Shown here one piece after another: positions 130 through 64,000 of a stretch of DNA of 64,000 nucleotides. Numbering within the stretch: the stretch's first letter is position 1; each line of letters opens with the position of its first letter. The position numbers were made by a program, and so were the translations under genes. The notes beneath the pieces were generated by a model, which was not told the origin of the DNA, ran no database searches, and saw only the letters and a program-made list of their open reading frames with translations. This stretch comes from Ramazzottius varieornatus (Eukaryota > Animalia > Tardigrada): positions 815,773 to 879,772 of the forward strand of contig BDGG01000010.1 of NCBI GenBank assembly GCA_001949185.1, read 5' to 3'.

Positions 130-2060
130 ATGTGGCTGCGAGGTTGAAAAGGCTGGCCACGACGGTAGTTCTCGAGCGTATCCACATCGCCCCAGTGGAC
201 GTTTACCTGTCCGTCCACGCCTCGCTCAAGATGTTCGTGGCATTGGACAAGACTTCGCTATCTTTCAATGAGATCGAACTGAACGATATCAACTCTACCG
301 TAGCGGAAGTCTGGAACTTTGTGGCTATGCACTACATCAAAGGGACCCTTCTCCGTGCTGGCTGGGTTATTGGCTCCATGGACCTTCTGGGGAACCCCGC
401 CAACCTACTTCGATCCCTCACTTTCGGTTGCAGCGCTCTGTTCGTCCGACCGTTCAGCTCACTGCATGCTGGCCCCGTATCCTTCCTCCAAGGTGAGTTT
501 ACTCTTTGGGAGGTTAAAACGAAGCGTACATGATCGCTACCTCAAGTGGCGCAACTTATCGCTGTCACTGGCTGAAAGCGTGCGCCAATTGGGAAAACGG
601 TCTTTTACGTCTCGTTTGCCGGCTTCTTCTTTGTGTCTCAGCAGTCTTACCCACGAGATGTACTTTCAGGTCTGGCTGAAGGAGCTTCGACATGTTTGAC
701 CAAGATTTCCGCCGGGACCATTTCGTCCGTCACCAATTTGGCCGAGAGTGTCTCGCGGAACCTTGATAGGGTATCGTTGGACGATGAGCATGTGCAGAGA
801 AGGATGGCTGCGATGTATAGACATCCAGAAGGTCTTGGAAGTGGTTTGAAGCAAGGTTGGTAAAACGGGGGGTTCACCACTCTGTGTATGGCGGGGCAGT
901 TGTGACTAGCATGGTTTTTGTAGGTCTCAGTGTCTTCGGGATGGGATTGCTGGGTGCGGTGGCTGGTTTAGTGGACCAGCCCATGCAGGCAATGCTTCAG
1001 CCGTCTTTGACGCCCAGTCAGTACTTGACAGCCTTCATGTTGGGAGTGACGAAAGGAGTGGTGGGAGCCTTGTCCAAGCCGGTAGCTGGAGCTGCCAGCT
1101 TAGTTTCACAGACCGGCCAGGGTATGTATCCCAGACCTCCGGACTTTTCCGGACAGAAAAATAGAAAGTTGTTCAGGACGCAGTGGATAATTAGGTTTCC
1201 TGACGTTGGAAGATCATAGCTTTGAAATCATGATGAAGCTGCATTATTTTTTGACGCTGTAAACAACCGTAACCTTCGCCGATTTTTTCGACGTTCTACG
1301 TATGGTGTGGTGTTTTTGTTTATAAACTTCGAGCCTTTTCGCTGGTTGTGGAGATAACTTTTAATGAACCCGTCGACAGGGAACATACGCACTATCAATA
1401 ACGGTGCGCTATCTTTTCAGGAATATTGCGTGGTCATGGTCTACTAGACTTCCCTCCACGACGCTTCCTAACCGAGCCAAAGCTGGCGGCCGGTTTCCCA
1501 GAGTCCACGTTGAAGTACATTTGGTATGTGAAAATGTGCCTTAATATGCGGCAGCCCGGAATAACAGCTTCACTTACTTTGACAGGAAAGTCGCTCCGCT
1601 ATTGCCGAACACCGTTCGCACACTATGTGTCGTCCAAGCCGTCCCGATCGTTAGAGAGTTCGACCAAAGCTCTTCCGACACCGTCTGCCTGTTCCTCACT
1701 GACAGCGCTCTGTTCGTGATCAGCTCTACCGATGATGAATTCCGTCAAGCATATTCCCTGTCCAAACTGAGCATTCACCTGTCACGCCCTGTCAATCATC
1801 CTGGCGCAGACGATGTCATGCAAGTTACCTTGCTCGTCGAACCCGATCCCGGTGAGACCGTAACCACCGCCGAGGACTTTGATGGAGAGACCTGGCCGTG
1901 GAGTCAGAAACCAGAGAAGACTGTACCTTCCAGGCCGCATTCTTCAAAGTCTGGTTCAAGTCACATGAGTGGTAACTATTGTAAGGAAAGTTATTTCCTA
2001 GAGTGGAAAGATGCCAGGCTCTTTGAAGAAGTGTTCCTGGTAGCAAAAGGCTACATATAA
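130..2060 (+). CDS. VPS13B: VPS13B-like lipid transfer protein, C-terminal exons (5' part lies outside the window)
   Basis: Exons ~130-492, 670-855, 924-1121, 1421-1523, 1586-2060 with GT-AG borders. Motifs HYIKGTLLRAGWVIGSMDLLGNPANLLRSL, GVVGALSKPVAGAASLVSQTGQG and a terminal PH-like segment match the VPS13B C-terminus. Stop TAA ends at 2060. Confidence 0.9.
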
Positions 2061-2378
2061 GAAATCCGTTTTGTGATCTTTGGCTGCGAGGCTTTATGTG
2101 GTGGGAAAACTTTGTCGAGTCGCACATAGCGCTTTTGATATAGATGTTCTGACAAGATTCGTCTTGGTTTTTCGATTGTATCGGACCATATTCCTTTTAT
2201 GCGAAAACTCCTGTGGCGTACTGCGAATTTTCAAAGAGCTGAAAACACCGAAGGTTGACTCGCCCAAGTCTCCGTCGGACGGCCACTCCAAACTGTCCCA
2301 AAGTCTTGCGAAAACTATATCATTCTGAAGCAAAATTTTTAAATTATCAACACCAGTGCAGCGAAAATCTAAAAAAGT

Positions 2379-2450
2379 TGACCACGATGGGGGTCGAACC
2401 CACAATCTTCTGATTCGAAGTCAGACGCCATGCCATTAGGCCACGCGGCC
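2379..2450 (-). tRNA. tRNA-Arg (anticodon TCG)
   Basis: Minus strand reads GGCCGCGTGGCCTAATGGCATGGCGTCTGACT-TCG-AATCAGAAGATTGTGGGTTCGACCCCCATCGTGGTC: cloverleaf with A and B boxes. A T6 Pol III terminator follows immediately (A-run at 2371-2376 on +). Confidence 0.95.
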
Positions 2451-2586
2451 ATTGTTACACTGCTTGCGCTTTTAATTCTCACGATATGACCGTCGATCAT
2501 TCAGATTTCGTCTTATCGATCTGCGGTTCGCCCTTTTAATCAACGCGGTTGTTGTCAAGTCACAGGTATCAACTAAATTTCAAGGT

Positions 2587-4696
2587 CTACATGAATCGTT
2601 TAGGCGGCACTTGGTAATCGTTCCAGATGACGCCACGCTTTTGCAGATCCTGGTACCACCGTGCGTGGGATACTTGTCTGCATACTTCTTTGTGATGGAA
2701 GAAGTCCGAGTCCAGAGACCGCACCTTCACCATGTCTTCCACTGTCATGTGCACCCAACGGGGACACTCCATTAGCTGCTGCATATAAATCTTTCGCTTG
2801 TAGAAATCGAAATTCAGCCACCGCAAGGCCGCTTCATAGATGTCCACTTCCGACTGGAAAACCGAACCGCCCGATGAGCACGTACTATCCCAATCCAGTA
2901 GACCAGTCAACGTGAATTCTACTACGCTTACCCGAATTTGGATATAGTCACTGCACATGATGGTGTACACTTTCTCGGGAGATTCTAAACATGGATGAAA
3001 GCATGCCAGGTTAACCGGAACAGTTGCAAATGTTTCAGTGCAGTTCCGGCTTACGTTTAGTCCAGTTCGGGTCTCTGGCTGCGACGTAGAAAGCGTCAGG
3101 TCTAGAAAGAGGCAACCATTGAAGTCAGAATCGAGCATGTTGGCGGACATATTGTCAGGTGCAATGTGGAATGGCGTGTTCGCTTACTCGAAGGCAGGCG
3201 GAGGTGGAGGTATCCTGATCAGGACGATCTTCTTCCTCTCCTTTTCATCCATCTCTTCCTTCTCAATCTGCTCGACCAACGCATCGGCGCTGCTCTTTCC
3301 GCCCAGTTTGACGGCAGCTTGCTTGGCCAATGTCGCCACTTCCTCGTTGGTCATCTCGACGTTGGAAGACATCTCCGAGGTCTTTTTGACCAGAGCAGCA
3401 GGACCTAAGCCTCGCAGTTTACGCTCCTTCTCCTTCTTCAACGCTTCTGTTGGATTTTGACGAACTGGTGGAAGATCGCCGGCGTGTTCCAGCGGAGCCC
3501 TTGCGATAAATTTCAGCAGGAACTTAACGTTCAGCTGTTCCGCTAACTAGAACAGCGCAAGAAACCGAAGAAAATTGCATAGGTCCATTCACGACGTTCA
3601 CGATCCGCAGTTTGTATTGCTCTGGTTCTGTATAGCTGTATCTCGACAAAAGAAGTTAATATTACCTTTTTTATGTCACAGCCATATTTGCCCAGTTTGA
3701 TTCTTCCGGTGTACATCCATTTGAAGACTCTTTTGACCGCCCTGGCCTGGACACGTATCCGACCAAGATCAGTCATGATATTATAGACTTCCGGAGAATT
3801 GTCCGGGGCGCTGTATAAGTCGCACAAAATGGCTGAAAAGCTGGCAAAGACGATTTTATGGCCCATAACTGTGACGCCGGATATCTCCAGAGAGCAATCC
3901 CAACCGAACTCTTCGCGATACTGTATGTATAAGTTCCTTCCCAATTTCACCGCTACAATCGAAAAACAAATAATTATTACATATTGTGAGACTAATCGAG
4001 AGTGGTCTTTACCCTTTGTTTAGAGCGCCACTTGCCATGATCGCCAAGTTCTTGCATAGTGTATCCGAGGACGCCGCGTAACTGCAGAACTTCCGCCTTG
4101 CTGTACCGTACATGTCCGAAAACCTTGTCGAGAGGAATCTGGGATATCCGTACTGCAGGAATTTCGACAACTTTGGGTACTAAGGCTCCTTGTGACTCGC
4201 TTAGTGGCATAGGTTCTTCAAAGAGATCCGTCGGTTGAATGGGAGGTGCGTCCATCACGATGGAGCCCGCGGAAGCTCTTCTCTTCGGTCTGTGATTGAA
4301 TACAATATTCAGCGTTTCCTACCGAGATGCACAAGTGTTACTTCATATCCTCATCGTAACGTCGAAGAAAAATGGTTTGAGAATTTTCAGACACGATGTA
4401 TGTCTTTAGTCTCGTGATTTCTAATGGGTGGGGTGTGACTGATTACACTGTGCTAGAACAATGCGTGAACAATCCGTTGGTTGGACAAGATCACCTAAAG
4501 CCATTCTAATTACCTGTGAAGCAGACTTATTTAGAAACATTCTGGTATTCTCCAAAGCTTCCTCCAGCTCTGCTGGTTCCTCCAGGAAGAAATTGTCTGG
4601 ATCGACCCTGTTATCCTCGGGGCCGGTAGCTTCATCGATACCGATATGTGGCTTTGGCTTCCTGTGATGCACCGCATTCTTTAGTTTACCCAACAT
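2587..4696 (-). CDS. BTB/POZ-BACK domain protein without Kelch repeats (multi-exon; 5' end uncertain)
   Basis: BTB motif DCSLEISGVTVMGHKIVFASFSAIL...VFKWMYTGRI (ORF 3543-3950). BACK motif QSEVDIYEAALRWLNFD...LMECPRW (2587-2900). The ORFs at 3992-4258 and 4421-4696 (CAG|GTAATT donor near 4513) are probable 5' exons. Confidence 0.7.
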
Positions 4697-5702
4697 GGTA
4701 AAAACTTAAGAGAAAAAACAACGATAAGTCCAGTAAGTCAGGTAAACGAAAATGAAAATTATACTTCAATTATGTGATTATAACGCTATCCCTTTCTCAA
4801 AATACTGGACCGGTAAATACACCGGCCTCACCGAAGGAAGATACGCCGTTCTCTGCTGTGAAAAACGTGGGTTGAATAACCATGGGAACTCCAGCAAGTC
4901 TACTCTACTCAATCAAACCTACGTAAGAAACAGACACAAATTTGAACCAATTGCAACCGCTGCTTTTTTTCAGGGACTCCTAAATGGATTACGTCATGAA
5001 TTGGGAAATTAGAGCAAAAAACTGCAGACTATGCACTTGACTTGCCTCATTGGGCCATTTATACGGGAAGGATAAGATCTGCAGGGTTGAAGGTTTGACA
5101 TCGCTTAGGCTTATCAGTCTAATGGAGGTTTCCTTGGCGGAAGAGAGCGATTGCGAGGTCGTTAGCGGAGAAAAAAGCTTCAAAGCTCGCTGACAAGGGT
5201 CCTGACGATCACACACTGAGTACCGACTCAGTACCGAATCAGCCGGTTGACTTGCTTGCCTGGGCCAATGGGCGCGAAAGACCACGGCAAAAGTGGGCTA
5301 AACACGGTAAAGAGCACCCGCCACAATGTACATGCTATCGGGACCACTTTTGTCAGGACCATCCTGATTAATGGCTGTTCTCGTAATTTTGCTGCCATGT
5401 TGTAAAGTAGCCAAGAGCACACATAAACCCCACACTGTCAAATATTTCAATGAGCCTTGGCTCTTCAGTCTCCATCGAACGACCATAAACGCGAGACGCC
5501 AAAGCATTTGCCTACCAGAATTCGGAGAAATAATTTTAATATGAAAATTCTTTCCGACAAATCTTTATGGAGCCATTCAGGATTCTTTGGACGTTCTGAC
5601 AAAGCCAGACATGATATTATCTTTTGTTTCGGGCATTTTGCTACGATTTCAATAAACACTGTAGAGTGTGCGAAGTTGAGCAATCCTGAAGCTACAGTAG
5701 TA

Positions 5703-5743
5703 CTAGCTAGTGGTCCTGACCACTGAGAAGGCCGATCGAGCAG
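5703..5743 (-). mobile_element. Helitron-like 3' terminus (hairpin + CTAG|T), copy 1
   Basis: Minus strand reads ...CAGTGGTCAGGACCACTAGCTAG|T. A near-identical ~40 bp occurs at 48736-48772. Confidence 0.45.
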
Positions 5744-8648
5744 TTAGTATTATCCGATTAACTGGCGCATCTTTTAACAAAATAGAGTGTGTGGTAAAGC
5801 CATGACTGAACATTCTGATTAGCACTGAAATCCTGGGACTTATAAAGGCCTCGCTCGCTCGGACTGAGGAAGGTCTGATTTCCGGCTCGTACGATCGTAT
5901 CCTTCGGGTAGGTGATCTTTCTGAAGATGTGAATGAATATTGGCTGGTTCAATAGAGTAGGAAATGGGAGAACGTTCCTGATGTTTCATTCTTGAATGGT
6001 GCAATTGAGTAGATTCGTTTAGCCTTTGCCATGGGTTTTAAGGCTGTATGCGCGCCGGAAGAAGGAGACCATTACATGTGCACGTGCAGTCTGTGAATCT
6101 ATCTAAGGAGCAATCTTTTTAAAAGTCACACATGAATGAAGTTATATAGATTTGACAGTGACAAAAATTCCCGGGAGATTTGCGACCAAGCGCGTCAGGC
6201 AAAAAAATGAAGGCTCAGTGATCGTTATGATCAACATTTTTGTCCCAGCTAATGACTTTTTACAGTGTCCCACTGAGGAATAGGCCACTTCCACTAGCAG
6301 TCAACCAGTTCTACTGCCACATTGCCAACATAAAGGCGTAGCCCAAAATATCGAACTTGACTTGACAGTAACTCCCACGGCTTCCGGTATTGCTTGCTTG
6401 TTCTCCCTATTTTTCCCCGAAACGTAGTTCAGAACAAGCACACTGTAAATTTCTAGAAAAATGCGGTGAATCTGTTTTGGACCTTGCATCGTTTGGTCAA
6501 TTCACATAACCTTCGATCTCCGATGACGTGGCTGGAGTTTGGAAGTGAGTAATTAGGAAAACAAGGAACTGCTTGATGGTTTTCACGTTGGACGTTAATA
6601 AACCCAGATAAACATTTTCTGACGTCAGATCACTCTTCTGTGTGTACTGGAGTCTAAGCGTCTGTAGACCTCATGTCTTGGAGCATTACATTCGTCCCAC
6701 ACAGACGTCCAAACTATTGTGCAAATGCATGATGTCACTGATGTGTCGCAGGCCGGGTCTCCGTCTTCACGGACAAAAGCAAAGAGGCTCGACTGCATGC
6801 AAAATTATCTTTGCATGCATTTCCGGCTTTCCCGCCGTCTCAAAGACAACAACGTCAAGCGATCTCTTCCGTCCACGCTCGCTGGAGAAAAAGGGGAGTA
6901 TTCCCAATGCGCTTCAACGCGAGTCTCAACGCCGAGCGTACAGCTCTCTGTTCGACGCTCTTTGCATCTCCATCAACACGATAACTCGAAATAGTCCCTG
7001 TGCTCTCTTTGGCTGCGAACTCTATAGCTTGTCGAAAGCCACGTTAAGCATATCGGACTTGAAAAGCGACGCAAAGTTTCCCGGTCGTCAACATGTCCAC
7101 GCAGTTTGAGCCCAAGATCCGACTATACCCTGCCCTGGTTGACGACCTATCTTGATCAGGGCGCAGTGAGAATTTTATCCCTCTCGGCCTACTCTCCTGG
7201 TCAATGCTTTCCTCATTCCATCTGCATTAAGGACTTGGCCCAAAATACATCCATAAATTTTACGACTCCTATGCACGCCGTCGATCCCACTATTCACCCT
7301 GTACTACTCATGCACCGGCGTACCGTACATATACACAGCCGAGTTCTACTTCGATCCGTACGTAACTGCCATCGCGTGCCACGTACGTCGTTCAAAATGT
7401 CATTCCGAAGTCAAGATAAAGTTCTTCTTCTTTAGAATGTACAGTGAAAGAAAGGCCAGTTGCATGCACGACATTCCGGGAAAACTTGGAGAGCGAGCTT
7501 CCGCGTCTCTGAAGCTGAGTACACCATACATGTGGGATAGCGCGTACGCGTTGGGCAAGCTGACTGCCACTGGGCGCGCTGGCTAATGTCAAGACCTCTT
7601 TTTCGGGGTCTCCGTCGTGTACTAGGCATCTGTCTGGAGAACAGAGGCGAAGACAGGACTCATGACTCACTGCACAGTCTGTAGTACATCAAATGTCAGT
7701 TAAGTTTTCTTGAGCGATCCTTCTAACCGGCGATATCGCTCCCCTCGCTCCGCGCTCCTGAGCCTCCCTCCACTATAGATATATGTATTCCGGGGTGATA
7801 AATATCAGTGCAATGGCGTGCCGCGATCTTTGCTCAACTGTCTCTTGGTTTGATCAATAGGGCTGAAACCGTCCGGACACGTCAATGTCGTTTCTTCTTA
7901 AAGTAATGGTAGTACTGTATGTCTAACTTGTAATAACCGTACACGCAAAGACTTGCCGCGTGCCGACATTCAAAGATTGAGCGGCAGTTGTCGGAAGCGA
8001 AGGAAGATATAGCCAGTAGTCCTCTATAAACTCTGTGATGCTCTCCGTCTGCCATCATACATATGCAGATATATTCCGCGCCGGCCACACGAAAGGATCT
8101 CCGCACCATCCATCGCCACCTAATTAAGACAAAGCGATGCTTCAAGTATCCCTCAGCAGAACGTGCAGGTGTGCACGAACCGGCTCTGTTACCTCTACTC
8201 GCGAGATGAACCTCGCGGATTAAATATTTGCACACCCAAAGGAATATATCCTACATCCAATATGCTGATCCTTGTTTCTGCTCGATCTTCACAGGTCGAT
8301 TGTCGGTCCATCGATGTATCGATGCTTTCTTGAAAATATTGGAGATCGGCTCCATATGACATGATACTCAACACTCACTTTTTTCCTTCATCGATAGCGT
8401 GTCCATGGGACTTTGAAGTATCGGGTTATCACTTGCATTGTGTGTAAATTTTCCTCTTGTGAGTACTTTTTTGCTGATTTATTTATTATCTTTATTCCCA
8501 CATGAACCGGCATTGTTGGCCATTGTTCGGTGAAGTGATGATCCAGCTTCATGTGCCACGGATATTGCTCACTCGACGCCGGGCACTCTTACGGCTGGTA
8601 TAGCGAAGCTGTGCGGCTAGCCGGAGAACCAGTCCTCGTGCCGGCAGA

Positions 8649-11600
8649 ATGCGCAAGTTTTCGGCCAATGATAAATGCCAGAAATGCAAATATTACTGCA
8701 AGAAGTTTATAGCCTTTTTGTTTTCCCATATTGGCTTGTGTGGCCTTGTCGTCGCATATGTGATATTAGGAGCCATTTCCTTCTCCTACCTGGAGGTTAG
8801 TTTTTGCACCGCGCGAGGTTTCTACTGCCCGCGATTGGCTGCGGAGACCTATTGACCGTTTACTGTAATCTCGTCGGCTGGCGTCAGAACACTTGTAGAG
8901 ATTCTCTAAGTTTCCCATCCGTATTTCCCAGCACAGACAATATCCGCAGGGACTTCATGTGATTGCCTTTGGCCCAGTTTGTTTTCTTCCTGTTTTACTT
9001 CTTACAACTGCTCTGTTTATCTGAAGTCCAGGAGAAGTAGAAGGATCGGCTTTTTCCCGATAACTGGTTGAATTCTAATGAGTTCCCGGCGGGTTCTTGG
9101 GGAATTGTTTTTGGAGCGTAGGAAATGATGTTTGTCTAGCTTAAAAGTTTTATTGAGTGTAACATTGATTGAATAGGCTGTTTGCACAGATAGGAAGAGC
9201 ATGTTTTGCATATTGTGTAAAATGGGGTTCCCAGTGTCTGTTGACATAGGACAATGGCATCCGTAGCTGTCAGCCTTGTAGACACAGGACTTGAGCCATG
9301 CGCCTTTTCTTTACAATGTTATTTTCCGGGTCGTCATCTACTGATTCTACTCTTCTCTGATTACAGGCCGACTACGAAAGAAACGTCAAGCTAAGGGTGC
9401 AGGAGCTTCATAACCGGACCGTGGAAGAACTATGGAATACAACTTGTGCCAATGCGCCCATGGCTGATCTTGACCTCCAGGTACTCGACAGCCCATACAA
9501 ATCAAGTCAAATCACAAGGAGAAAACAAATCAGGAATCAAAAACAGAAACGCTAAAATTTCGAAGAGGATTGTATCACAGTTCGTATCTATGTGCGGTAA
9601 CGCAAATGAACTCAGGGACGCACCGACAAGCGCGTCAAAGAGAGAGGGTTGTCTTTTCTTCATAAGGCACCGGTTCCCTGGAATCGGATCTTCCGGTCGT
9701 AGGGAGAAGCTTTTCCAGTTGGGCTTTATGCTGTGTTTTGTACATAGGAAAACCCCGCGGTGAACATACGCAATGATATAGCGGATAGTCGCAGTTGGAA
9801 GAACCGGATATTGGACCAAGCAAGAAGAGAAGCGACCTTGGATTTATGGAATATCACCCTGGAAATGAATGTCCTCTTTGAGAAGAACTGGACCGCGCTA
9901 GTCAACGAGCGGATACTGCAATATCAGAACCAATTATTGGACATTTTATTAAACGATTCGATGGAGTTAAATAACGTTACGTCCTTTCCGGGCAACTATC
10001 CCTCCAATGATACGACATATGGCAGTGAGGGCAAGGAGTCGGTGCGGACCAAACTGTACAGCTTCGAGAAGCAAGTCCTGCAGGAAGTCAGACAGCATGG
10101 ATATGATGGGGACGATGATGCTTCGGAAGCCGGCACGGTCCAATGGTCCGTTGCTGGTGGACTCTTGTACTCCCTCACCGTCATTACCACAATCGGTAAG
10201 AGCTTCACTCGTGTACCTAATTTCCGCATTGTTCAATTTCCGGAACTCGTATGTGATCCGTCCGTGATTCTCCTGATGCTGAGATCTAGTGCGCCAATTA
10301 GGTTAAACACTGTAGGGAGAGTATGCCAATTGATCGGACGGAGTACCGTGCTCTAATATTATGGTGCTAGCGGCTATTATGGAGTATATATTTCTAGTGG
10401 TTGCATATGTGTATGGCTTGTACACGATAGCATGTCGTTTTTGTGTGATTGATCTGATTCCAGACAAACAGAAAATGTATGGGCCTTTAGAGCTACTTAG
10501 CTTTCAACCTATTGGCACCTCGCCATTATCGACAAATTTATACTCCCGCTAAACACGCACCCGGCTTCCATATGAGCAGTGGCACAGCCGGAAACCAGGA
10601 TAACAAGGGCACATGCACTACACGGGGTTTCATGGCGGAGAACCGGAAATAGGCTGCATTTTATTGGTAGTTCCGTGTACCTAGGCCCGTAGTGCGACCT
10701 CCTGTCACGGTGTGCTTAGCCTGAATCTTCAAAAGATCAATCGTCTGGTGACAGAAAATATTGATATCACTAATGCTGAACAAACAAGCTTACAATTAGG
10801 TCGATTAAAGATTAAACGGATCGATTTCGGCTGTAGGATTTATCTTCATGGTACTTGCTCGCTATCGGATTCGTGGTCATAATGTATTCCGCCAGGAGAA
10901 AAGTCCGGTGATTTGGCAAGACCATCTTCAGAAATGCGTAATGAAACCGAAGACGAGTATGGTTCTCGTCACTCGAGAACCAGACAGAAGTTTATAGTGC
11001 TAATAACTGTCACTCGACCTTTTCTAACCAGATTTCGCCTGCGACGACTGATGCCAGCCAGACGCTGCCAAATGCATCTTCTTTTTACGCATTTTGGAAT
11101 ATTTCTGAATATGTGGAGTTGCCTGTCCTGATGGTCCTTTGACGTCACGGCCCAGTTCGTGGCTCTTCATCACACTGCCAAGCTGTGAGGAGAAGCGACA
11201 TTTCGGCATGCTGAGATCGTATGCTCTTTAGCTGTGTATTGCTGGTGTGGGTCCGATCGGCATCGAACGTTAAGTGCAGCGGATCGGCTTGCTTTTATCT
11301 ACTTTAGGGACACGGAGGGAAACATGTTCGAGTACCATGACTTGCGTAAACGCAAAGAGATGAACTGCTTATCATAATTGGATAAAATGGTGCCACATGT
11401 CAGCAAGGGAAGGCAAAGACAAACTTTGTTATAGGTCAACTGTCTTCTTTTGGGGAGCGCGCTCGGTCTGCTGCCAAAGCCGGGCAAAAATGGAGGAAGA
11501 TGTATGCCTGATGGACTGTCAAAGATTTGCAGATCGACGAGTGAAAACCTGCACATACCGTATCAAGGCGTCATTAGGGGAATACGATGTTGCGTTTGAG

Positions 11601-60427: not shown

Positions 60428-61012
60428 TTAGTCCTCGATTGAAAAGGCGAATCCTAAGCGAGTAACTGAGCATTTATATTTTCAGCAGCCCGCAAGTCGT
60501 TCAGGACGACCACGTAACGCTGACACCTCGAATTGTCGCATCACCCCTAGCGGTACATCGGTACTGAAGACGATCCTTCCCAAGTCGCAACGATAAGGAA
60601 TATTTCCAGTAATATTAGATTCACGTTCTTTTTTATTTCCGTTTGCAGCTATGTGCTCCAAGTCTTTTTATGTATATTATCAGTGTAAACGAAGAAAACG
60701 GTACATTCTGTTTTTGCATGTCACCTTCTTGTGTAATATTCTTCTTTTTGTTTTTATCCTGGTTTTCTAGAGGTGACAGATGTGTTTCGGTGGCGTTTCT
60801 AATTTTCTGTACTAATTTCCCACCTCAGCAGCTCATATTTTATTGCGCGGACTTCACTATCCACCTAAATCAGAAATAGCATCGAAAAACAACCAAATTA
60901 GCCCACTTTAGTACATCAACAGCCAATTTTCTACAGTAAAACAACAACGAGATACTCCATAAAACAATATCCTGCCAAAGAAGTAGAAAAGAGATTCAAG
61001 AAAACGAACAGC

Positions 61013-62647
61013 TCATTTTTTCTTTGTGTATTCCGTGTACTTTTTACACGAACCGAACACCTTGTCGACAGGGTACCGTGTAGCATTAATCTGCATCTTC
61101 TTCTCGATAGCTTTGGGAAGGTTCACCTTACAGACATCCGCTAAGCGGATCAGGTAAATGGCAACGTCGGCCAGCTCTTGTTCCAGAGCACTCTTGTCTT
61201 TCCTGTCCCAGTCCGCAAGACCAGCTTCAACCTCACCTTTCCACTGGAAAAGCTCGGCGACTTCACCGACCTCACCTACCATCGCCATCACCAAATTCCT
61301 CGGCTACAACATCACGAATATTTTTAAACTATTTCGATCAAAATTCGCAGAGCAGCTCCGATACTGGACCGATAGAACAGAGCACGGAGTTTCTGGTAGC
61401 TCGCCAAACTAACTTCGCTCGACAAAGTGTTTTCCCAAGTAGCGTAAGTTTCCAGTGTTATTGGCGGAAGGCTTGCGCTATTCGGAGGAAAACGATCCTG
61501 CCAAGTATATCCGAACTTACTGTATGAAATTTCTGCCAGTCGCGGGCTTCGACGAACTTCTGCTGCATCAGCCTTCTGTAAGGAAACATACCGAGTAACC
61601 GAAGTTAGAGCGAAAAAAGGAAATCGATGTTGGCTGGACTCACATTCGTTCCAAGGTTGGGGCAGCAGCGAAGCAGAATGCCGGTTTCTCTTTCTTGCCT
61701 CCATCGTCCTTCGGTTTCCCTGGAGTCGCCGGTCTCTGCTTCTTGCACGTGAACGGCTGCGGGATCTTCCCGTCACTCCAGTAGTACATCACGACAGCGA
61801 AGTTTGCCGCTACTTCTCGACTAGCGACGTTTGGTACGAAGTACGCCACGATCCTCTTAAAGCCGGCCGCCGTGTCACTTCGGTAGTAGATGCGAATGAA
61901 AGGTCTGCTCTCTGTCAGGTCCATATTCCATACTTGACCATTGCCCGTCCTCGACTGCTTCCACCCACCGTTCCCGTCATCCCGTAGGAAGTCTACTGCA
62001 TCAGCTTTCTGAGCGTCACTCAACCTCACCACAGCCGAAGCTGTACCTTGGAACTGGTTCGGCATGGTGTCGTTCGCGTACTGGTCTAAGACTTCCTCAT
62101 CGGACAGCTTCTTCAGAATGGATTCCATCGAATCTTCCGTCCGGAAGTATTTGTAATCGTTGCTGCAAAACGAACAAACGTTAAAATCGATCCTTGAGAA
62201 TGACTGGACGAGTTTACCTGTCGTAGTAGATGTTGCCGAGAACGGGGTCTTCCGTCATAAGGACTTTGGCGATGCCGTTGTTTCCGTCATGGTAGAGGAT
62301 CGTTGGCAAAGAGAACTTTTTGGTCGAGCCATCAATCAACTCTTCTTGCGTATGTTCGCCAATCTCGTCCATGTCATCTACCTTCCGTTTGTGTCCACCG
62401 TGCATGGAAAGACCATTGTCGTCTTCCCCTTCCGTCATGAGTCCCTGATCCTCTTCGGCACTGTGAAATTCAAGTTTTGAGCGGCTGACAACGGACCAAG
62501 TAGGAGGAAGGCTAAAGAAGCAAGATTGTGTAGGAGTAAGAAATCTTACGGGGTTTCCGTTTCAGCAGATATCTCGCTTTCGGCGATGTGCTCGTCCTGC
62601 ATCGAGTCCGCTTCGTTCATACGATCCAGCTCCACAGAATCCATCAT
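61013..62647 (-). CDS. DCTPP1: dCTP pyrophosphatase 1 (MazG-like) with a long N-terminal extension
   Basis: FCFAAAPTLERM|RRLMQQKFVEARDWQKFHT|PRNLVMAMVGEVGEVAELFQW...LEQELADVAIYLIRLADVC...RYPV. Phase-compatible exons ~62647-62550, 62460-62218, 62162-61643, 61576-61521, 61303-61013. Confidence 0.88.
61392..61520. mobile_element. Palindromic MITE family A copy (DCTPP1 intron, opposite orientation)
   Basis: CTGGTAGCTCGCCAAAC...TTTTCCCAAGTAGCG...TGTTATTGGC (reverse complement of GCCAATAACA)...GAAAACGATC. Confidence 0.6.
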
Positions 62648-63103: not shown

Positions 63104-64000
63104 ATGTCGTTTAGCTTCGGAGCGACGGCGTTTGGCAGTCAACCCGCAACACAAACAGCTCTGCCTGCTTTCGGCTCATCTTTTGGAGGCTTCGGACAAC
63201 CAGCCGGAACAAGCCTTTTTGGTGGCCTGTCAAATACATCAATTGGGACTAAACCGTCAACGGGAAGTACAGGCTTCGGCGGTTTCTCTATGACTGCAGC
63301 CACCACTGCGCCGAGCTTCAACTTTCCCTCCACTACCACAACAAACGCTGCTCCGTCCAGCCAGCCCTCTGTCTTTGGAATAAGTACGACAACTCCGTCA
63401 AGCACCTATCACTTTCCCACGAAACCGTCGGAGCAACCGGGAACATCGTCTTCGGGCAGCAATGCTCAACAAACCGTTACTCCCGCGAAAGCGTACGTAT
63501 CTCATCAGCAGGCTCATGACGTCATGCTTCATACGTCATGCTTCATACGTCATGCTTCATACGTCATGCTTCATACGTCATGAGCCAGCTGATGAGAAAG
63601 CACTGTTCAACGCGCAGCTTAATCGGAATGTTTATGTCATGCGTGACCCAATCGGATAAACGGATTTGTTCCCGTATTTTCCGTTCTGCTGACAGTTTAT
63701 GTGCTTTTCTTTACAGTGGATCGACCGGATCGCGACCGAAAGACCAGATTATCCCGGAGCAGTTGGGTTCGGACATTTTTGATTTGGAGAAGCAGATTAA
63801 GAAATATCAGAAGATCCAAGAGGACGCATCCGAGTACTCTTTAGCTGACGCTGTGGCATGGAGTTCACAGATGGACGGCTTTGACGTGTCGGCGACGAAA
63901 GTCCGAAATCAGTTATCAGAAACATTCAATGTGATAGATCTCTTACGTCGGAATACGGCCAGACTTCGGTCGCATAACCTCTTGTTCAACCGGCTGGCCA
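63104..64000 (+). CDS. NUP58: FG nucleoporin p58/p45 (5' part; runs off the window)
   Basis: FG-rich exon 63104-~63492. The exon from ~63717 encodes IPEQLGSDIFDLEKQIKKYQKIQEDAS...IDLLRRNTA, resembling the start of the Nup58 helical region. Confidence 0.75.
63500..63597. repeat. 14 bp tandem repeat (ACGTCATGCTTCAT x ~4.5) enclosed by a 23 bp inverted repeat, Nup58 intron
   Basis: TCTCATCAGCAGGCTCATGACGT ... ACGTCATGAGCCAGCTGATGAGA (one mismatch) brackets the array at 63519-63582. Confidence 0.9.

What the first reader, a model, noticed from the sequence alone, without database searches (positions are those of the whole stretch)
61013..62647. dCTP pyrophosphatase fused to a putative CG-1/WRKY-GCM1-like DNA-binding domain
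Seen: the DCTPP1 N-terminal motif FCFAAAPTLERM ends an uninterrupted exon that first encodes a ~130 aa globular segment (FLRDDGNGGW...RIYYRSDTAAGFKRIVAYF...AVVMYYW). Two acidic, phase-compatible exons precede it, one with an NLS-like HKRK. Known: DCTPP1 is normally a small stand-alone MazG-fold enzyme that sanitises the nucleotide pool (dCTP, 5-methyl- and halogenated dCTP). Inference: the pattern R-DG..W / YY / F.R...Y / VV.Y parallels the CAMTA CG-1 domain, a WRKY-GCM1-type fold often derived from MULE transposases. That suggests a chromatin-targeted nucleotide-sanitising enzyme, or a nucleotide-sensing DNA binder. I do not know of this architecture being described.
Basis: partly seen in the sequence, partly recalled or inferred. 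Interest (0 to 1): 0.85.

Follow-up and report, generated by a model that had tools for sequence, protein, structure and literature searches.

The report
Tardigrade dCTPase with transposon-derived DNA-binding arm
The only dCTP pyrophosphatase (DCTPP1) gene of the tardigrade Ramazzottius varieornatus carries a conserved N-terminal arm taken from a Mutator-like transposase, whose folded part is predicted to look like WRKY/NAC/GCM DNA-binding domains, so this nucleotide-cleaning enzyme is probably tethered to DNA.

Summary
Window 61013-62647 (minus strand) holds a five-exon gene with GT..AG introns. Its exon translations match the public 401-aa protein RvY_14384-1 of Ramazzottius varieornatus piece by piece. 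Hypsibius exemplaris has the same fusion (393 aa, named "putative dCTP pyrophosphatase 1"). The architecture is therefore already a deposited gene model, but its N-terminal 270 residues have no Pfam match, and I found no paper on it.

The C-terminal 125 residues are an intact DCTPP1 (E 1e-37 to mouse and human DCTPP1). It is the only such locus found in the genome.

The exon-3 domain folds with high confidence. Its best structural matches are NAC, GCM and WRKY DNA-binding domains (Z 6.5-7.2), but it has no zinc ligands. It does not match the CG-1 profile.

The same domain forms the N-terminus of Mutator-like (MULE) transposons at about 16 other loci in this genome. Three copies show roughly 78-bp terminal inverted repeats and perfect 9-bp target duplications.

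The domain is more conserved between the two tardigrades (82%) than the enzyme part (76%).

DNA tethering of the enzyme is inferred, not shown. No RNA reads could be obtained. Earlier scan notes flagged Mutator-like elements elsewhere in this genome, but not this fusion.

The parts
62550..62647 (-). Exon 1: start codon at 62647 and the first 32 codons plus 2 nt of an acidic, poorly conserved N-terminus.
   Evidence: translation found at residue 1 of P0084. Donor is GTAAGA.
62218..62460 (-). Exon 2: acidic region with an HKRK nuclear-localisation-like motif, then a conserved pre-domain stretch (residues about 81-114). This stretch is homologous to the exon upstream of the domain in the transposon copies.
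   Evidence: The stretch is 74% identical to Hypsibius. BLASTP alignments to P0008 (E 1e-17, from residue 94) and P0012 (E 2e-15, from residue 22) run across the exon 2/3 junction. AF2 gives low confidence here.
61739..62161 (-). Exon 3, first part (residues 115-255): the folded domain, with two short helix pairs and a five-strand antiparallel sheet. Family motifs are FQG, DGNGGW, YY, GFKR and YYW. It has no Cys/His ligands and is WRKY/NAC/GCM-like in the predicted structure.
61682..61738 (-). Exon 3, middle (residues 256-274): a basic, Lys/Pro-rich linker (pI 9.8). Its length varies between species but it always stays in frame. This is the likely junction between transposase-derived and DCTPP1 sequence.
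   Evidence: Similarity to the transposon copies ends just before it.
61644..61681 (-). Exon 3, end: start of the DCTPP1 homology (the motif F-C-F-A-A-A-P-T-L-E-R). The donor AT|GTGAGT gives Met-stop if the intron is retained (isoform 2).
   Evidence: alignment to mouse DCTPP1 starts at residue 275.
61521..61575 (-). Exon 4: first helix of the MazG-like core.
61013..61303 (-). Exon 5: MazG-like catalytic core with the metal-binding motifs (E-V-G-E-V-A-E and E-Q-E-L-A-D) and the stop codon.
   Evidence: Pfam PF12643 at 44.3 bits against a cut-off of 27. Alignment to DCTPP1 structures 2a3q, 6sqw and 7mu5.
60839..60844 (-). Candidate AATAAA polyadenylation signal, about 170 nt after the stop codon.
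   Evidence: Read from the sequence only. Not tested.

Best explanation
This is the single DCTPP1 gene of Ramazzottius varieornatus. In an ancestor shared at least with Hypsibius, the enzyme acquired the N-terminal arm of a Mutator-like (MULE) transposase. That arm is an acidic tail followed by the transposase's N-terminal domain, a zinc-free beta-sheet module with the WRKY/NAC/GCM fold.

Shown:
- The coding fusion.
- Its conservation.
- The intact enzyme motifs.
- Homology of the arm to the transposon N-termini.
- The predicted fold.

Inferred:
- The arm still binds DNA.
- Because DCTPP1 is a tetramer in mammals, the protein would present up to four DNA-binding modules. These would hold a dCTP / 5-modified-dCTP pyrophosphatase on chromatin, so the nucleotide pool is cleaned where DNA is synthesised or repaired.
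- An intron-3-retaining isoform would give the arm alone.
For: - **Gene model.** It equals deposited protein P0084 exon by exon, with GT..AG introns.
- **Orthologous fusion.** Hypsibius exemplaris has the same fusion (P0017, 393 aa, Pfam MazG-like). Two further unnamed sequences (P0019, and P0003 at 52% identity) have the domain and the DCTPP1 motif in one open frame.
- **Single locus.** The exon-5 search found this DCTPP1 locus alone. The Pfam search found one other weak match, inside a larger helical gene.
- **Enzyme part.** E 1e-37 to mouse and human DCTPP1, with the acidic metal motifs kept.
- **Constraint.** Identity between the two tardigrades is 82% in the domain, 76% in the enzyme part and 30% in the acidic tail.
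- **Fold.** AF2 mean pLDDT 86. VIA-align against 48,161 chains puts GCM first (Z 7.2), with NAC 6.2, WRKY33 5.4, WRKY1 4.6 and AFT2 3.5 also in the top 50. In the second look, the ten best rows are all NAC or WRKY, and nearly the whole WRKY domain is superposed at about 3 A rmsd.
- **Charge.** The sheet core is basic, pI 9.1.
- **Transposon link.**
  - About 16 other loci carry the domain, usually with a transposase C-terminal piece about 1.1 kb downstream.
  - The ORFs carry the motifs ITDGERAL, LCVLHI and NLSEAMNK, plus a SWIM-like CxC...CKH.
  - Pfam MULE is the only hit on four ORFs and exceeds its cut-off at copy C1:3804440 (28.7 bits).
  - The element in L049 spans 577-9356, with about 78-bp TIRs. 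Perfect 9-bp target duplications are seen in three copies.
  - BLASTP of P0084 against the transposon-type P0008 gives E 1e-17. Against Paramacrobiotus P0012 it gives E 2e-15, covering residues 22-257.
- **Single origin.** The fusion-type domains form one clade (85/93).
- **Literature.** MULE transposases are known to carry N-terminal WRKY-GCM1 DNA-binding domains and to give rise repeatedly to host factors (PMC1702500).
Against: - Transcript support rests on the public models, which were built from RNA-seq merged with ab initio predictions (PMC5034306).
- Structural Z scores of 5-7 are in the range the tool calls common for unrelated models. Foldseek E-values are weak, 0.05-0.25.
- The zinc ligands that define WRKY-GCM1 domains are absent.
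- No sequence profile of WRKY, FAR1, GCM, FLYWCH, NAM or CG-1 matches.
- The domain as a whole is near neutral (pI 5.5) and less basic than its transposon relatives, so DNA affinity may have been weakened or changed.
Confidence: 0.72

Rival explanations
1. The arm is transposase-derived but no longer binds DNA. It serves instead as a protein-interaction, oligomerisation or regulatory module for the enzyme, for example autoinhibition together with the acidic tail.
For: The whole domain is near neutral (pI 5.5) and less basic than its transposon relatives, net charge -1 against +3 to +15. The arm has a long acidic tail. No zinc ligands are present.
Against: All family-wide motifs are kept, and the sheet core is still basic at pI 9.1. 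At 82% identity the conservation is that of a working surface. The nearest folds are all DNA binders.
Confidence: 0.17
2. The gene acts mainly in transposon control. The arm, especially the arm-only isoform from intron-3 retention, binds MULE ends and competes with transposase. The enzyme part would be incidental.
For: An arm-only isoform is annotated (P0001). Related MULEs look recently active, with 95-97% identical copies and intact target duplications.
Against: The arm is only 25-37% identical to present transposon domains, so shared DNA specificity is doubtful. The Met-stop after the donor follows from the splice consensus itself in this phase. The reading frame through linker and enzyme is kept in four lineages. 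No TIR-like sequence lies in the window.
Confidence: 0.06
3. The fusion is an annotation artefact. A transposon-derived gene and a short DCTPP1 gene lie next to each other and are transcribed separately.
For: No RNA reads could be examined here. One annotated isoform stops before the enzyme part.
Against: - The domain and the first DCTPP1 residues (aligned to mouse residues 22-32) lie in the same exon and frame, with no stop between them, in four sequences. The linker differs in length among them.
- No in-frame Met lies between the domain's last strand and the motif.
- Independent annotations in two species give the fusion.
Confidence: 0.04

Closest known systems
DCTPP1 / RS21-C6 (all-alpha MazG-like dCTP pyrophosphatase; PDB 2a3q, 2oig, 6sqw, 7mu5)
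   Same: Residues 275-397 align over the whole mouse and human core at E 1e-37, with the acidic metal-binding motifs kept. Pfam PF12643 is over its cut-off.
   Different: The mammalian enzyme is 170 aa with a short disordered N-terminus. Here 274 residues of transposase-derived sequence precede the core.
WRKY-GCM1 superfamily DNA-binding domains of MULE transposases and their host-recruited derivatives (FAR1/FHY3, Aft1/Rcs1, GCM1; Babu et al. 2006, PMC1702500)
   Same: It sits at the N-terminus of a MULE transposase. The predicted antiparallel sheet superposes on WRKY, GCM and AFT2. It was recruited into a host gene.
   Different: No Cys/His zinc site. No profile match to the WRKY, FAR1, DBD_Tnp_Mut, FLYWCH or GCM families. 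It is recruited onto an enzyme rather than becoming a stand-alone transcription factor.
NAC domain (ANAC019, ORE1)
   Same: This is the best whole-domain superposition: Z 7.0-7.2, 98-105 residues aligned, rmsd 3.0-3.3 A, with the N-terminal helices included. NAC is also zinc-free.
   Different: No sequence-profile match. NAC is a plant transcription-factor family with no known transposase link.
CAMTA CG-1 domain
   Same: Only a loose motif resemblance (DG..W, YY, F.R, V.Y), read by eye.
   Different: No Pfam PF03859 match at E<=1. A search of this genome with that profile found nothing. No solved CG-1 structure appeared in the fold searches, so fold kinship could not be tested.
SETMAR-type genes (a transposase DNA-binding region fused to a host enzyme)
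   Same: A DNA-transposon transposase part is joined in frame to a host enzyme, and the fusion is kept by selection.
   Different: The transposon superfamily differs (mariner against MULE), the enzyme differs (SET methyltransferase against dCTPase), and here only the N-terminal arm is kept, not the catalytic core. This comparison rests on my own knowledge and was not tested here.

Membership tests
DCTPP1 (MazG-like all-alpha NTP pyrophosphatase) | Profile match over the curated threshold | tested here: met
   PF12643 scores 44.3 bits on exon 5 and 40.5 bits on P0084, against a cut-off of 27.
DCTPP1 (MazG-like all-alpha NTP pyrophosphatase) | Full-length core homology to solved DCTPP1, with the acidic metal-binding motifs | tested here: met
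   E 1.2e-37 to 2a3q, with residues 275-397 aligned to 22-144. The E-x-x-E and E-x-x-D motifs are aligned and kept.
DCTPP1 (MazG-like all-alpha NTP pyrophosphatase) | Homotetramer and dCTP / 5-modified-dCTP hydrolysis | not testable with these tools
   This needs enzymology. No complex prediction was run.
WRKY-GCM1 superfamily | Core four-stranded antiparallel sheet fold | tested here: met
   This is met at the level of a predicted model. Scores are GCM Z 7.2, WRKY18 Z 6.7 (79 of 81 residues, rmsd 3.1), WRKY1 Z 6.5 and AFT2 Z 3.5. NAC and WRKY fill the top ten rows. The Z values are middling by the tool's own note.
WRKY-GCM1 superfamily | Zinc-chelating Cys/His residues | tested here: not met
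   The domain has no His and only one Cys, at residue 253, which lies outside the sheet. The family alignment has no conserved Cys or His column.
WRKY-GCM1 superfamily | Sequence-profile membership (WRKY, FAR1, DBD_Tnp_Mut, FLYWCH, GCM) | tested here: not met
   hmmscan against Pfam at E<=1 gives none of them for exon 3, and at E<=0.1 none for six relatives.
WRKY-GCM1 superfamily | Position as the N-terminal domain of MULE transposases | tested here: met
   The domain lies upstream of the DDE core and the SWIM-like motif on the same strand, in two element subfamilies.
CG-1 (CAMTA) | Profile match to PF03859 | tested here: not met
   No hit at E<=1.
Mutator-like (MULE) transposon, for the paralogous copies | Terminal inverted repeats and 9-bp target-site duplications | tested here: met
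   L049 positions 577-654 pair with 9356-9279 as an inverted repeat. The 9-bp duplications TGGCCAACC, ATATTCAGC and GAGCAAATC flank three copies.
Mutator-like (MULE) transposon, for the paralogous copies | MULE DDE transposase core | tested here: met
   PF10551 scores 28.7 bits, over its 27.6 cut-off, at C1:3804440-3804640, which lies between the domain and the C-terminal piece of one copy. Other copies score 15-25 bits, with MULE as the only family hit. The motifs are visible.
Mutator-like (MULE) transposon, for the paralogous copies | SWIM zinc finger after the core | tested here: inconclusive
   PF04434 scores 14.1 bits, E 0.036, below its cut-off. The CxC...CKH pattern is present in two subfamilies.
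Domesticated transposase-derived host gene | Single copy, orthologues in other species, no element ends, purifying selection | tested here: met
   There is one locus. Hypsibius has an orthologue. No TIR motif lies in the window. The domain is 82% identical between species, with short branches in the tree.

The most novel reading that the evidence does not exclude
Tardigrades tether their only dCTP / modified-dCTP pyrophosphatase to DNA through a domesticated, zinc-free WRKY/NAC-like domain of a Mutator transposase. Nucleotide-pool cleaning would then happen locally at replication and repair sites and contribute to their unusual genome stability under desiccation and radiation. The domain itself would be a new, unannotated branch of the WRKY-GCM1 fold, so far seen only in tardigrades.
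Probability: 0.3. Interest if true: 0.8.

Novelty: new variant of a known kind. Interest (0 to 1): 0.62.

Why it matters
**Evolutionary interest.** Recruitment of transposase DNA-binding domains into host genes is a known route to new regulators. Joining one to a nucleotide-pool sanitising enzyme is, as far as my searches show, undescribed. I found no paper on it, and the domain has no Pfam family.

**Conservation.** The arm is more conserved than the enzyme it is attached to, and the fused gene is the organism's only DCTPP1. The arm is therefore unlikely to be a passenger.

**Relevance to tardigrade biology.** Tardigrades are studied for DNA protection and repair. A DNA-tethered dCTPase is a concrete candidate that can be knocked down and assayed.

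**A dated capture event.** The parent transposon family is still present, with intact ends, in the same genome. This offers an unusually complete before-and-after view of a domestication.

**A possible parallel.** One metagenomic protein (P0064) carries a Zn2Cys6 DNA-binding domain in front of a MazG-like domain. This hints that DNA-targeted DCTPP1 may have arisen more than once.

Tried and rejected
- **Searches on exon 3 that found nothing.** The ESM Atlas gave no usable hit. A PDB sequence search gave only chance-level hits. Pfam gave only noise for exons 2 and 3.
- **Foldseek.** Against the PDB, no match reached E<=0.001. The fold assignment rests on the VIA-align runs.
- **Second AF2 model.** The P0001 model of exons 1-3 did not extend the folded domain into exon 2. 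Residues 1-110 have pLDDT about 50.
- **CG-1.** A search of this genome with the CG-1 profile found nothing. Its controls were uninformative.
- **Second MazG-like hit.** The hit at C3:4242032 (28 bits) sits in a 146-aa helical ORF inside what looks like a large multi-exon gene. It is not found with the exon-5 protein. I rejected it as a second DCTPP1.
- **TIR remnant.** The transposon's TIR start motif is absent from the window.
- **Promoter scan.** The sigma-70 promoter/terminator scan is irrelevant to a eukaryote.
- **Domain tree.** It shows the fusion-type domains as one clade but leaves the deep branches unresolved. It does not name the donor subfamily.
- **Joined sequences.** I made no joined (spliced) sequence of my own. 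Exons were searched one by one by reference. Whole-protein steps used only the database entries P0084, P0001 and P0017 returned by the tools.
Full report
**What is in the window**

On the minus strand, between 62647 (ATG) and 61013 (end of the stop codon), lies a five-exon gene. I placed the exons at 62647-62550, 62460-62218, 62162-61644, 61575-61521 and 61303-61013 by reading the sequence and translating each exon.

All four introns begin with GT and end with AG. Each exon's whole-codon translation is an exact substring, in order, of a public protein. That protein is P0084, RvY_14384-1 of the tardigrade Ramazzottius varieornatus (GAV04043.1, 401 aa).

A second deposited isoform, RvY_14384-2 (P0001, 287 aa), is exons 1-3 with intron 3 retained. 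Reading through the donor AT|GTGAGT gives Met and then a stop. The spliced form continues ...LERI-RLMQQ....

The published gene set was built from RNA-seq of six states merged with ab initio models (PMC5034306). I made no joined sequence of my own. Exons were searched one at a time by reference, and whole-protein steps used only database entries returned by the tools.

**The enzyme half**

Exon 5 matches Pfam MazG-like (PF12643) at 44.3 bits against a cut-off of 27. Residues 275-397 of P0084 align with residues 22-144 of mouse RS21-C6/DCTPP1, and with human DCTPP1, at E about 1e-37. The two acidic metal-binding motifs are kept.

A search of the whole assembly with the exon-5 protein finds this locus only. 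A search with the Pfam model adds one 28-bit match, inside a helical ORF of what looks like a large unrelated gene. The fusion gene is therefore the organism's only recognisable DCTPP1.

**The fusion is a coding fusion, and it is conserved**

The globular segment, a basic Lys/Pro-rich linker and the first DCTPP1 residues lie in one exon and one open frame.

The same arrangement is found elsewhere:
- Hypsibius exemplaris has it in P0017 (OQV25255.1, 393 aa, named "putative dCTP pyrophosphatase 1", 75% identical over exon 3).
- Two unnamed sequences show it as well: P0019, and P0003 at 52% identity. The linker differs in length among them but the frame stays open.

Between Ramazzottius and Hypsibius, identity by region is as follows:

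| Region | Identity |
|---|---|
| Acidic tail (1-80) | 30% |
| Pre-domain stretch (81-114) | 74% |
| Domain (115-255) | 82% |
| Linker | 53% |
| Enzyme core | 76% |

The added domain is thus at least as constrained as the enzyme.

**What the added domain is**

It has no Pfam match, no PDB sequence match and no ESM Atlas neighbour. A phmmer scan of 1.84 billion representatives gave 14 hits at E<=1e-3. Every hit that carries a name is from a tardigrade: RvY_14068 of Ramazzottius and LOC129590911 of Paramacrobiotus metropolitanus.

The alignment shows a family signature: FQG, DGNGGW, YY, GFKR and YYW. It has no conserved Cys or His. The Ramazzottius domain has no His at all, and its only Cys lies outside the sheet.

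AlphaFold2 on a 17-row alignment gives mean pLDDT 86, and above 90 for residues 1-140 of exon 3. The model has two short helix pairs and a five-strand antiparallel sheet. A second model of exons 1-3 (P0001) leaves residues 1-110 at pLDDT about 50 and reproduces the same domain.

Foldseek finds nothing at E<=0.001. Its highest-probability rows are WRKY18 and NAC.

VIA-align against 48,161 representative chains gave these matches:
- GCM bound to DNA ranks first (Z 7.2, 100 residues aligned).
- Next come SSR4 (6.7), the WOPR domain of Wor1 (6.3) and the NAC domain of ORE1 (6.2).
- WRKY33 (5.4), WRKY1 (4.6), another WRKY (3.8) and AFT2 (3.5) are also in the top 50.

In the second look at Foldseek's best 1000 chains, the ten best rows are all NAC or WRKY:
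- ANAC019 scores Z 7.0-7.2 with 98-105 residues aligned at rmsd 3.0-3.3 A.
- WRKY18 scores Z 6.7 with 79 of its 81 residues aligned.
- WRKY1 scores Z 6.5 with 75 of 76 residues aligned.

The tool warns that Z below 8 is common for models without true relatives. No single score is therefore decisive. What carries weight is that several branches of one DNA-binding superfold (GCM, WRKY, AFT, NAC) crowd the top of both lists, out of tens of thousands of chains.

The sheet core is basic (pI 9.1). The whole domain is near neutral and less basic than its relatives.

**The transposon link**

Searching the Ramazzottius assembly with the family alignment found 22 matches. These fall at about 16 loci besides the gene itself, and many contain stop codons.

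A C-terminal piece found next to the domain in one copy recurs at most of these loci, about 1.1 kb downstream. Copies on different contigs are 93-95% identical in protein.

In the fuller copies, the frames between the two pieces carry the hallmarks of a Mutator-like transposase:
- ITDGERAL, the second catalytic Asp region.
- LCVLHI, the C-x-x-H motif.
- NLSEAMNK, the catalytic Glu region.
- A SWIM-like CxC...CKH pattern following these.

A second, more divergent subfamily shows YSDTTF, ITDGETAL, LCAIH and NYNEAFH behind its own copy of the domain.

Pfam MULE (PF10551) is the only family hit on four such ORFs, at 15-24 bits. In a six-frame scan it exceeds its 27.6-bit cut-off (28.7 bits) at C1:3804440-3804640. 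That position lies exactly between the domain and the C-terminal piece of one copy.

Comparing copies defines an element of about 8.8 kb, at L049 577-9356, with roughly 78-bp terminal inverted repeats. Three copies are flanked by perfect 9-bp target duplications: TGGCCAACC, ATATTCAGC and GAGCAAATC. L025 and L026 are internally deleted derivatives.

These are therefore genuine Mutator-superfamily transposons that appear to have moved recently. Two earlier scan notes (s1-794809, s1-792723) had flagged Mutator-like elements in this genome. The first covers my matches at C10:1309710-1310067.

**How much of the gene comes from the transposon**

BLASTP of P0084 against the transposon-type protein P0008 gives E 1e-17 over residues 94-251. 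Against the Paramacrobiotus protein P0012 it gives E 2e-15 over residues 22-257. Both alignments cross the exon 2/3 junction, and the second reaches into the acidic tail.

The intron before the domain is phase 2 in both the gene and the element. In the gap-free alignment the two intron positions lie within one codon of each other.

Similarity ends just after the last strand, where the Lys/Pro linker begins. The whole arm (acidic tail, pre-domain stretch, domain) therefore looks transposase-derived. The joint with DCTPP1 lies inside exon 3. That points to a genomic rearrangement rather than exon capture by splicing. This last step is inference.

In a maximum-likelihood tree of the domain, the four fusion-type sequences form one clade (85/93) with short branches. 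Deeper branches are unresolved.

Two points make transposon-to-host the likely direction of transfer. The domain is integral to two divergent MULE subfamilies. None of the other DCTPP1-type proteins returned by the search matched the arm region; their alignments cover only the MazG part.

**How it most likely works**

Shown:
- An intact DCTPP1 core.
- A conserved, well-folded N-terminal module of transposase origin.
- A predicted fold of the WRKY/NAC/GCM type.

From established knowledge:
- MULE transposases carry N-terminal WRKY-GCM1 DNA-binding domains and have repeatedly given rise to host DNA-binding factors (Babu et al. 2006, PMC1702500).
- Mammalian DCTPP1 is a tetramer that hydrolyses dCTP and 5-modified dCTPs. 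This rests on my own knowledge of the RS21-C6 and DCTPP1 literature.

Inferred:
- The arm still binds DNA, so a tetramer would carry up to four DNA-binding modules.
- These would hold the enzyme on chromatin. HKRK and the basic linker are plausible nuclear-localisation elements.
- dCTP and modified dCTP would then be removed where DNA is being made or repaired.
- The arm-only isoform could compete for the same sites.

I put about 0.72 on the combined structural and evolutionary reading with DNA tethering as the function. Most of the rest goes to a version in which the arm has changed to a non-DNA role.

**Comparison with what is known**

- **DCTPP1.** The enzyme half is a clear family member.
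- **WRKY-GCM1.** The arm works like, and by context descends from, the WRKY-GCM1-type DNA-binding domains of MULE transposases. It fails two defining tests of that superfamily, the zinc ligands and profile membership. I describe it as a zinc-free WRKY/NAC/GCM-like domain rather than file it as a member.
- **CG-1.**
- **Other DCTPP1 fusions.** These exist: methyltransferase fusions in Rhodosorus, tandem cores in Chloropicon, and a Zn2Cys6 plus MazG-like protein in a metagenome. "Always stand-alone" is therefore too strong, but none of them carries this arm.

**Novelty and verdict**

The gene models are public, so the architecture is not undiscovered sequence. Three things appear to be undescribed:
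- The identity of the arm.
- Its transposon origin.
- The existence of this domain family.

Five literature searches found nothing on it. I rate it a new variant of a known kind (a domesticated transposase DNA-binding domain fused to a host enzyme), with interest 0.62.

Noticed in passing
L049:577-9356 (G000:C2:2509576-2518355); deleted copies L025:3982-9141 and L026:3198-7678: A Mutator-like transposon family of about 8.8 kb with roughly 78-bp TIRs starting GGCTTGCTATGC and perfect 9-bp target duplications in three copies. Copies are 95-97% identical, and two are internally deleted. It looks recently active in a tardigrade genome.
   Followed up: yes
L047:2992-4951 (minus strand) and L048:3051-4181 (plus strand): A second, divergent MULE subfamily with its own copy of the N-terminal domain and clearer DDE motifs (YSDTTF, ITDGETAL, LCAIH, NYNEAFH). 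Its domain is among the closest (37%) to the one on DCTPP1.
   Followed up: partly
window 63104-63583 (+): An ORF rich in FG/GFG repeats, nucleoporin-like, starts about 450 bp upstream of the DCTPP1 start codon on the other strand. The two genes probably share a divergent promoter region.
   Followed up: no
P0012 (Paramacrobiotus metropolitanus LOC129590911, 299 aa) and P0008 (RvY_14068, 305 aa): These are annotated stand-alone proteins that consist of the acidic tail plus the domain, with no transposase core. P0008 is nearly identical to the element copies, so it is probably a transposon fragment annotated as a gene. P0012 may be a second domestication.
   Followed up: partly
P0004 (945 aa, origin unknown): A protein with seven near-identical repeats, each containing W-V-R-D-E-N-N-G-G-W-K-Q-T. 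This matches only the DGNGGWKQ strand motif of the domain (seven stretches). I have no explanation for it.
   Followed up: no
P0064 (298 aa, JGI metagenome), P0063 (225 aa), P0044/P0048/P0050 (Rhodosorus), P0023 (Chloropicon-like): Other N-terminal additions to DCTPP1-type cores: a Zn2Cys6 DNA-binding domain, an unknown beta-rich domain, a methyltransferase, and a tandem duplication of the core.
   Followed up: partly
L024:1375-1815 (minus strand; G000:C3:4241906-4242346): A 146-aa helical ORF inside an apparently large multi-exon gene scores just over the MazG-like cut-off (28.1 bits). It is not found with the DCTPP1 exon-5 protein, so it is probably a chance helical match.
   Followed up: partly
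L044:6663-7864 (minus strand): Two adjacent ORFs with a reverse-transcriptase-like Y-I-D-D motif lie next to a MULE copy. They are probably a retroelement.
   Followed up: no
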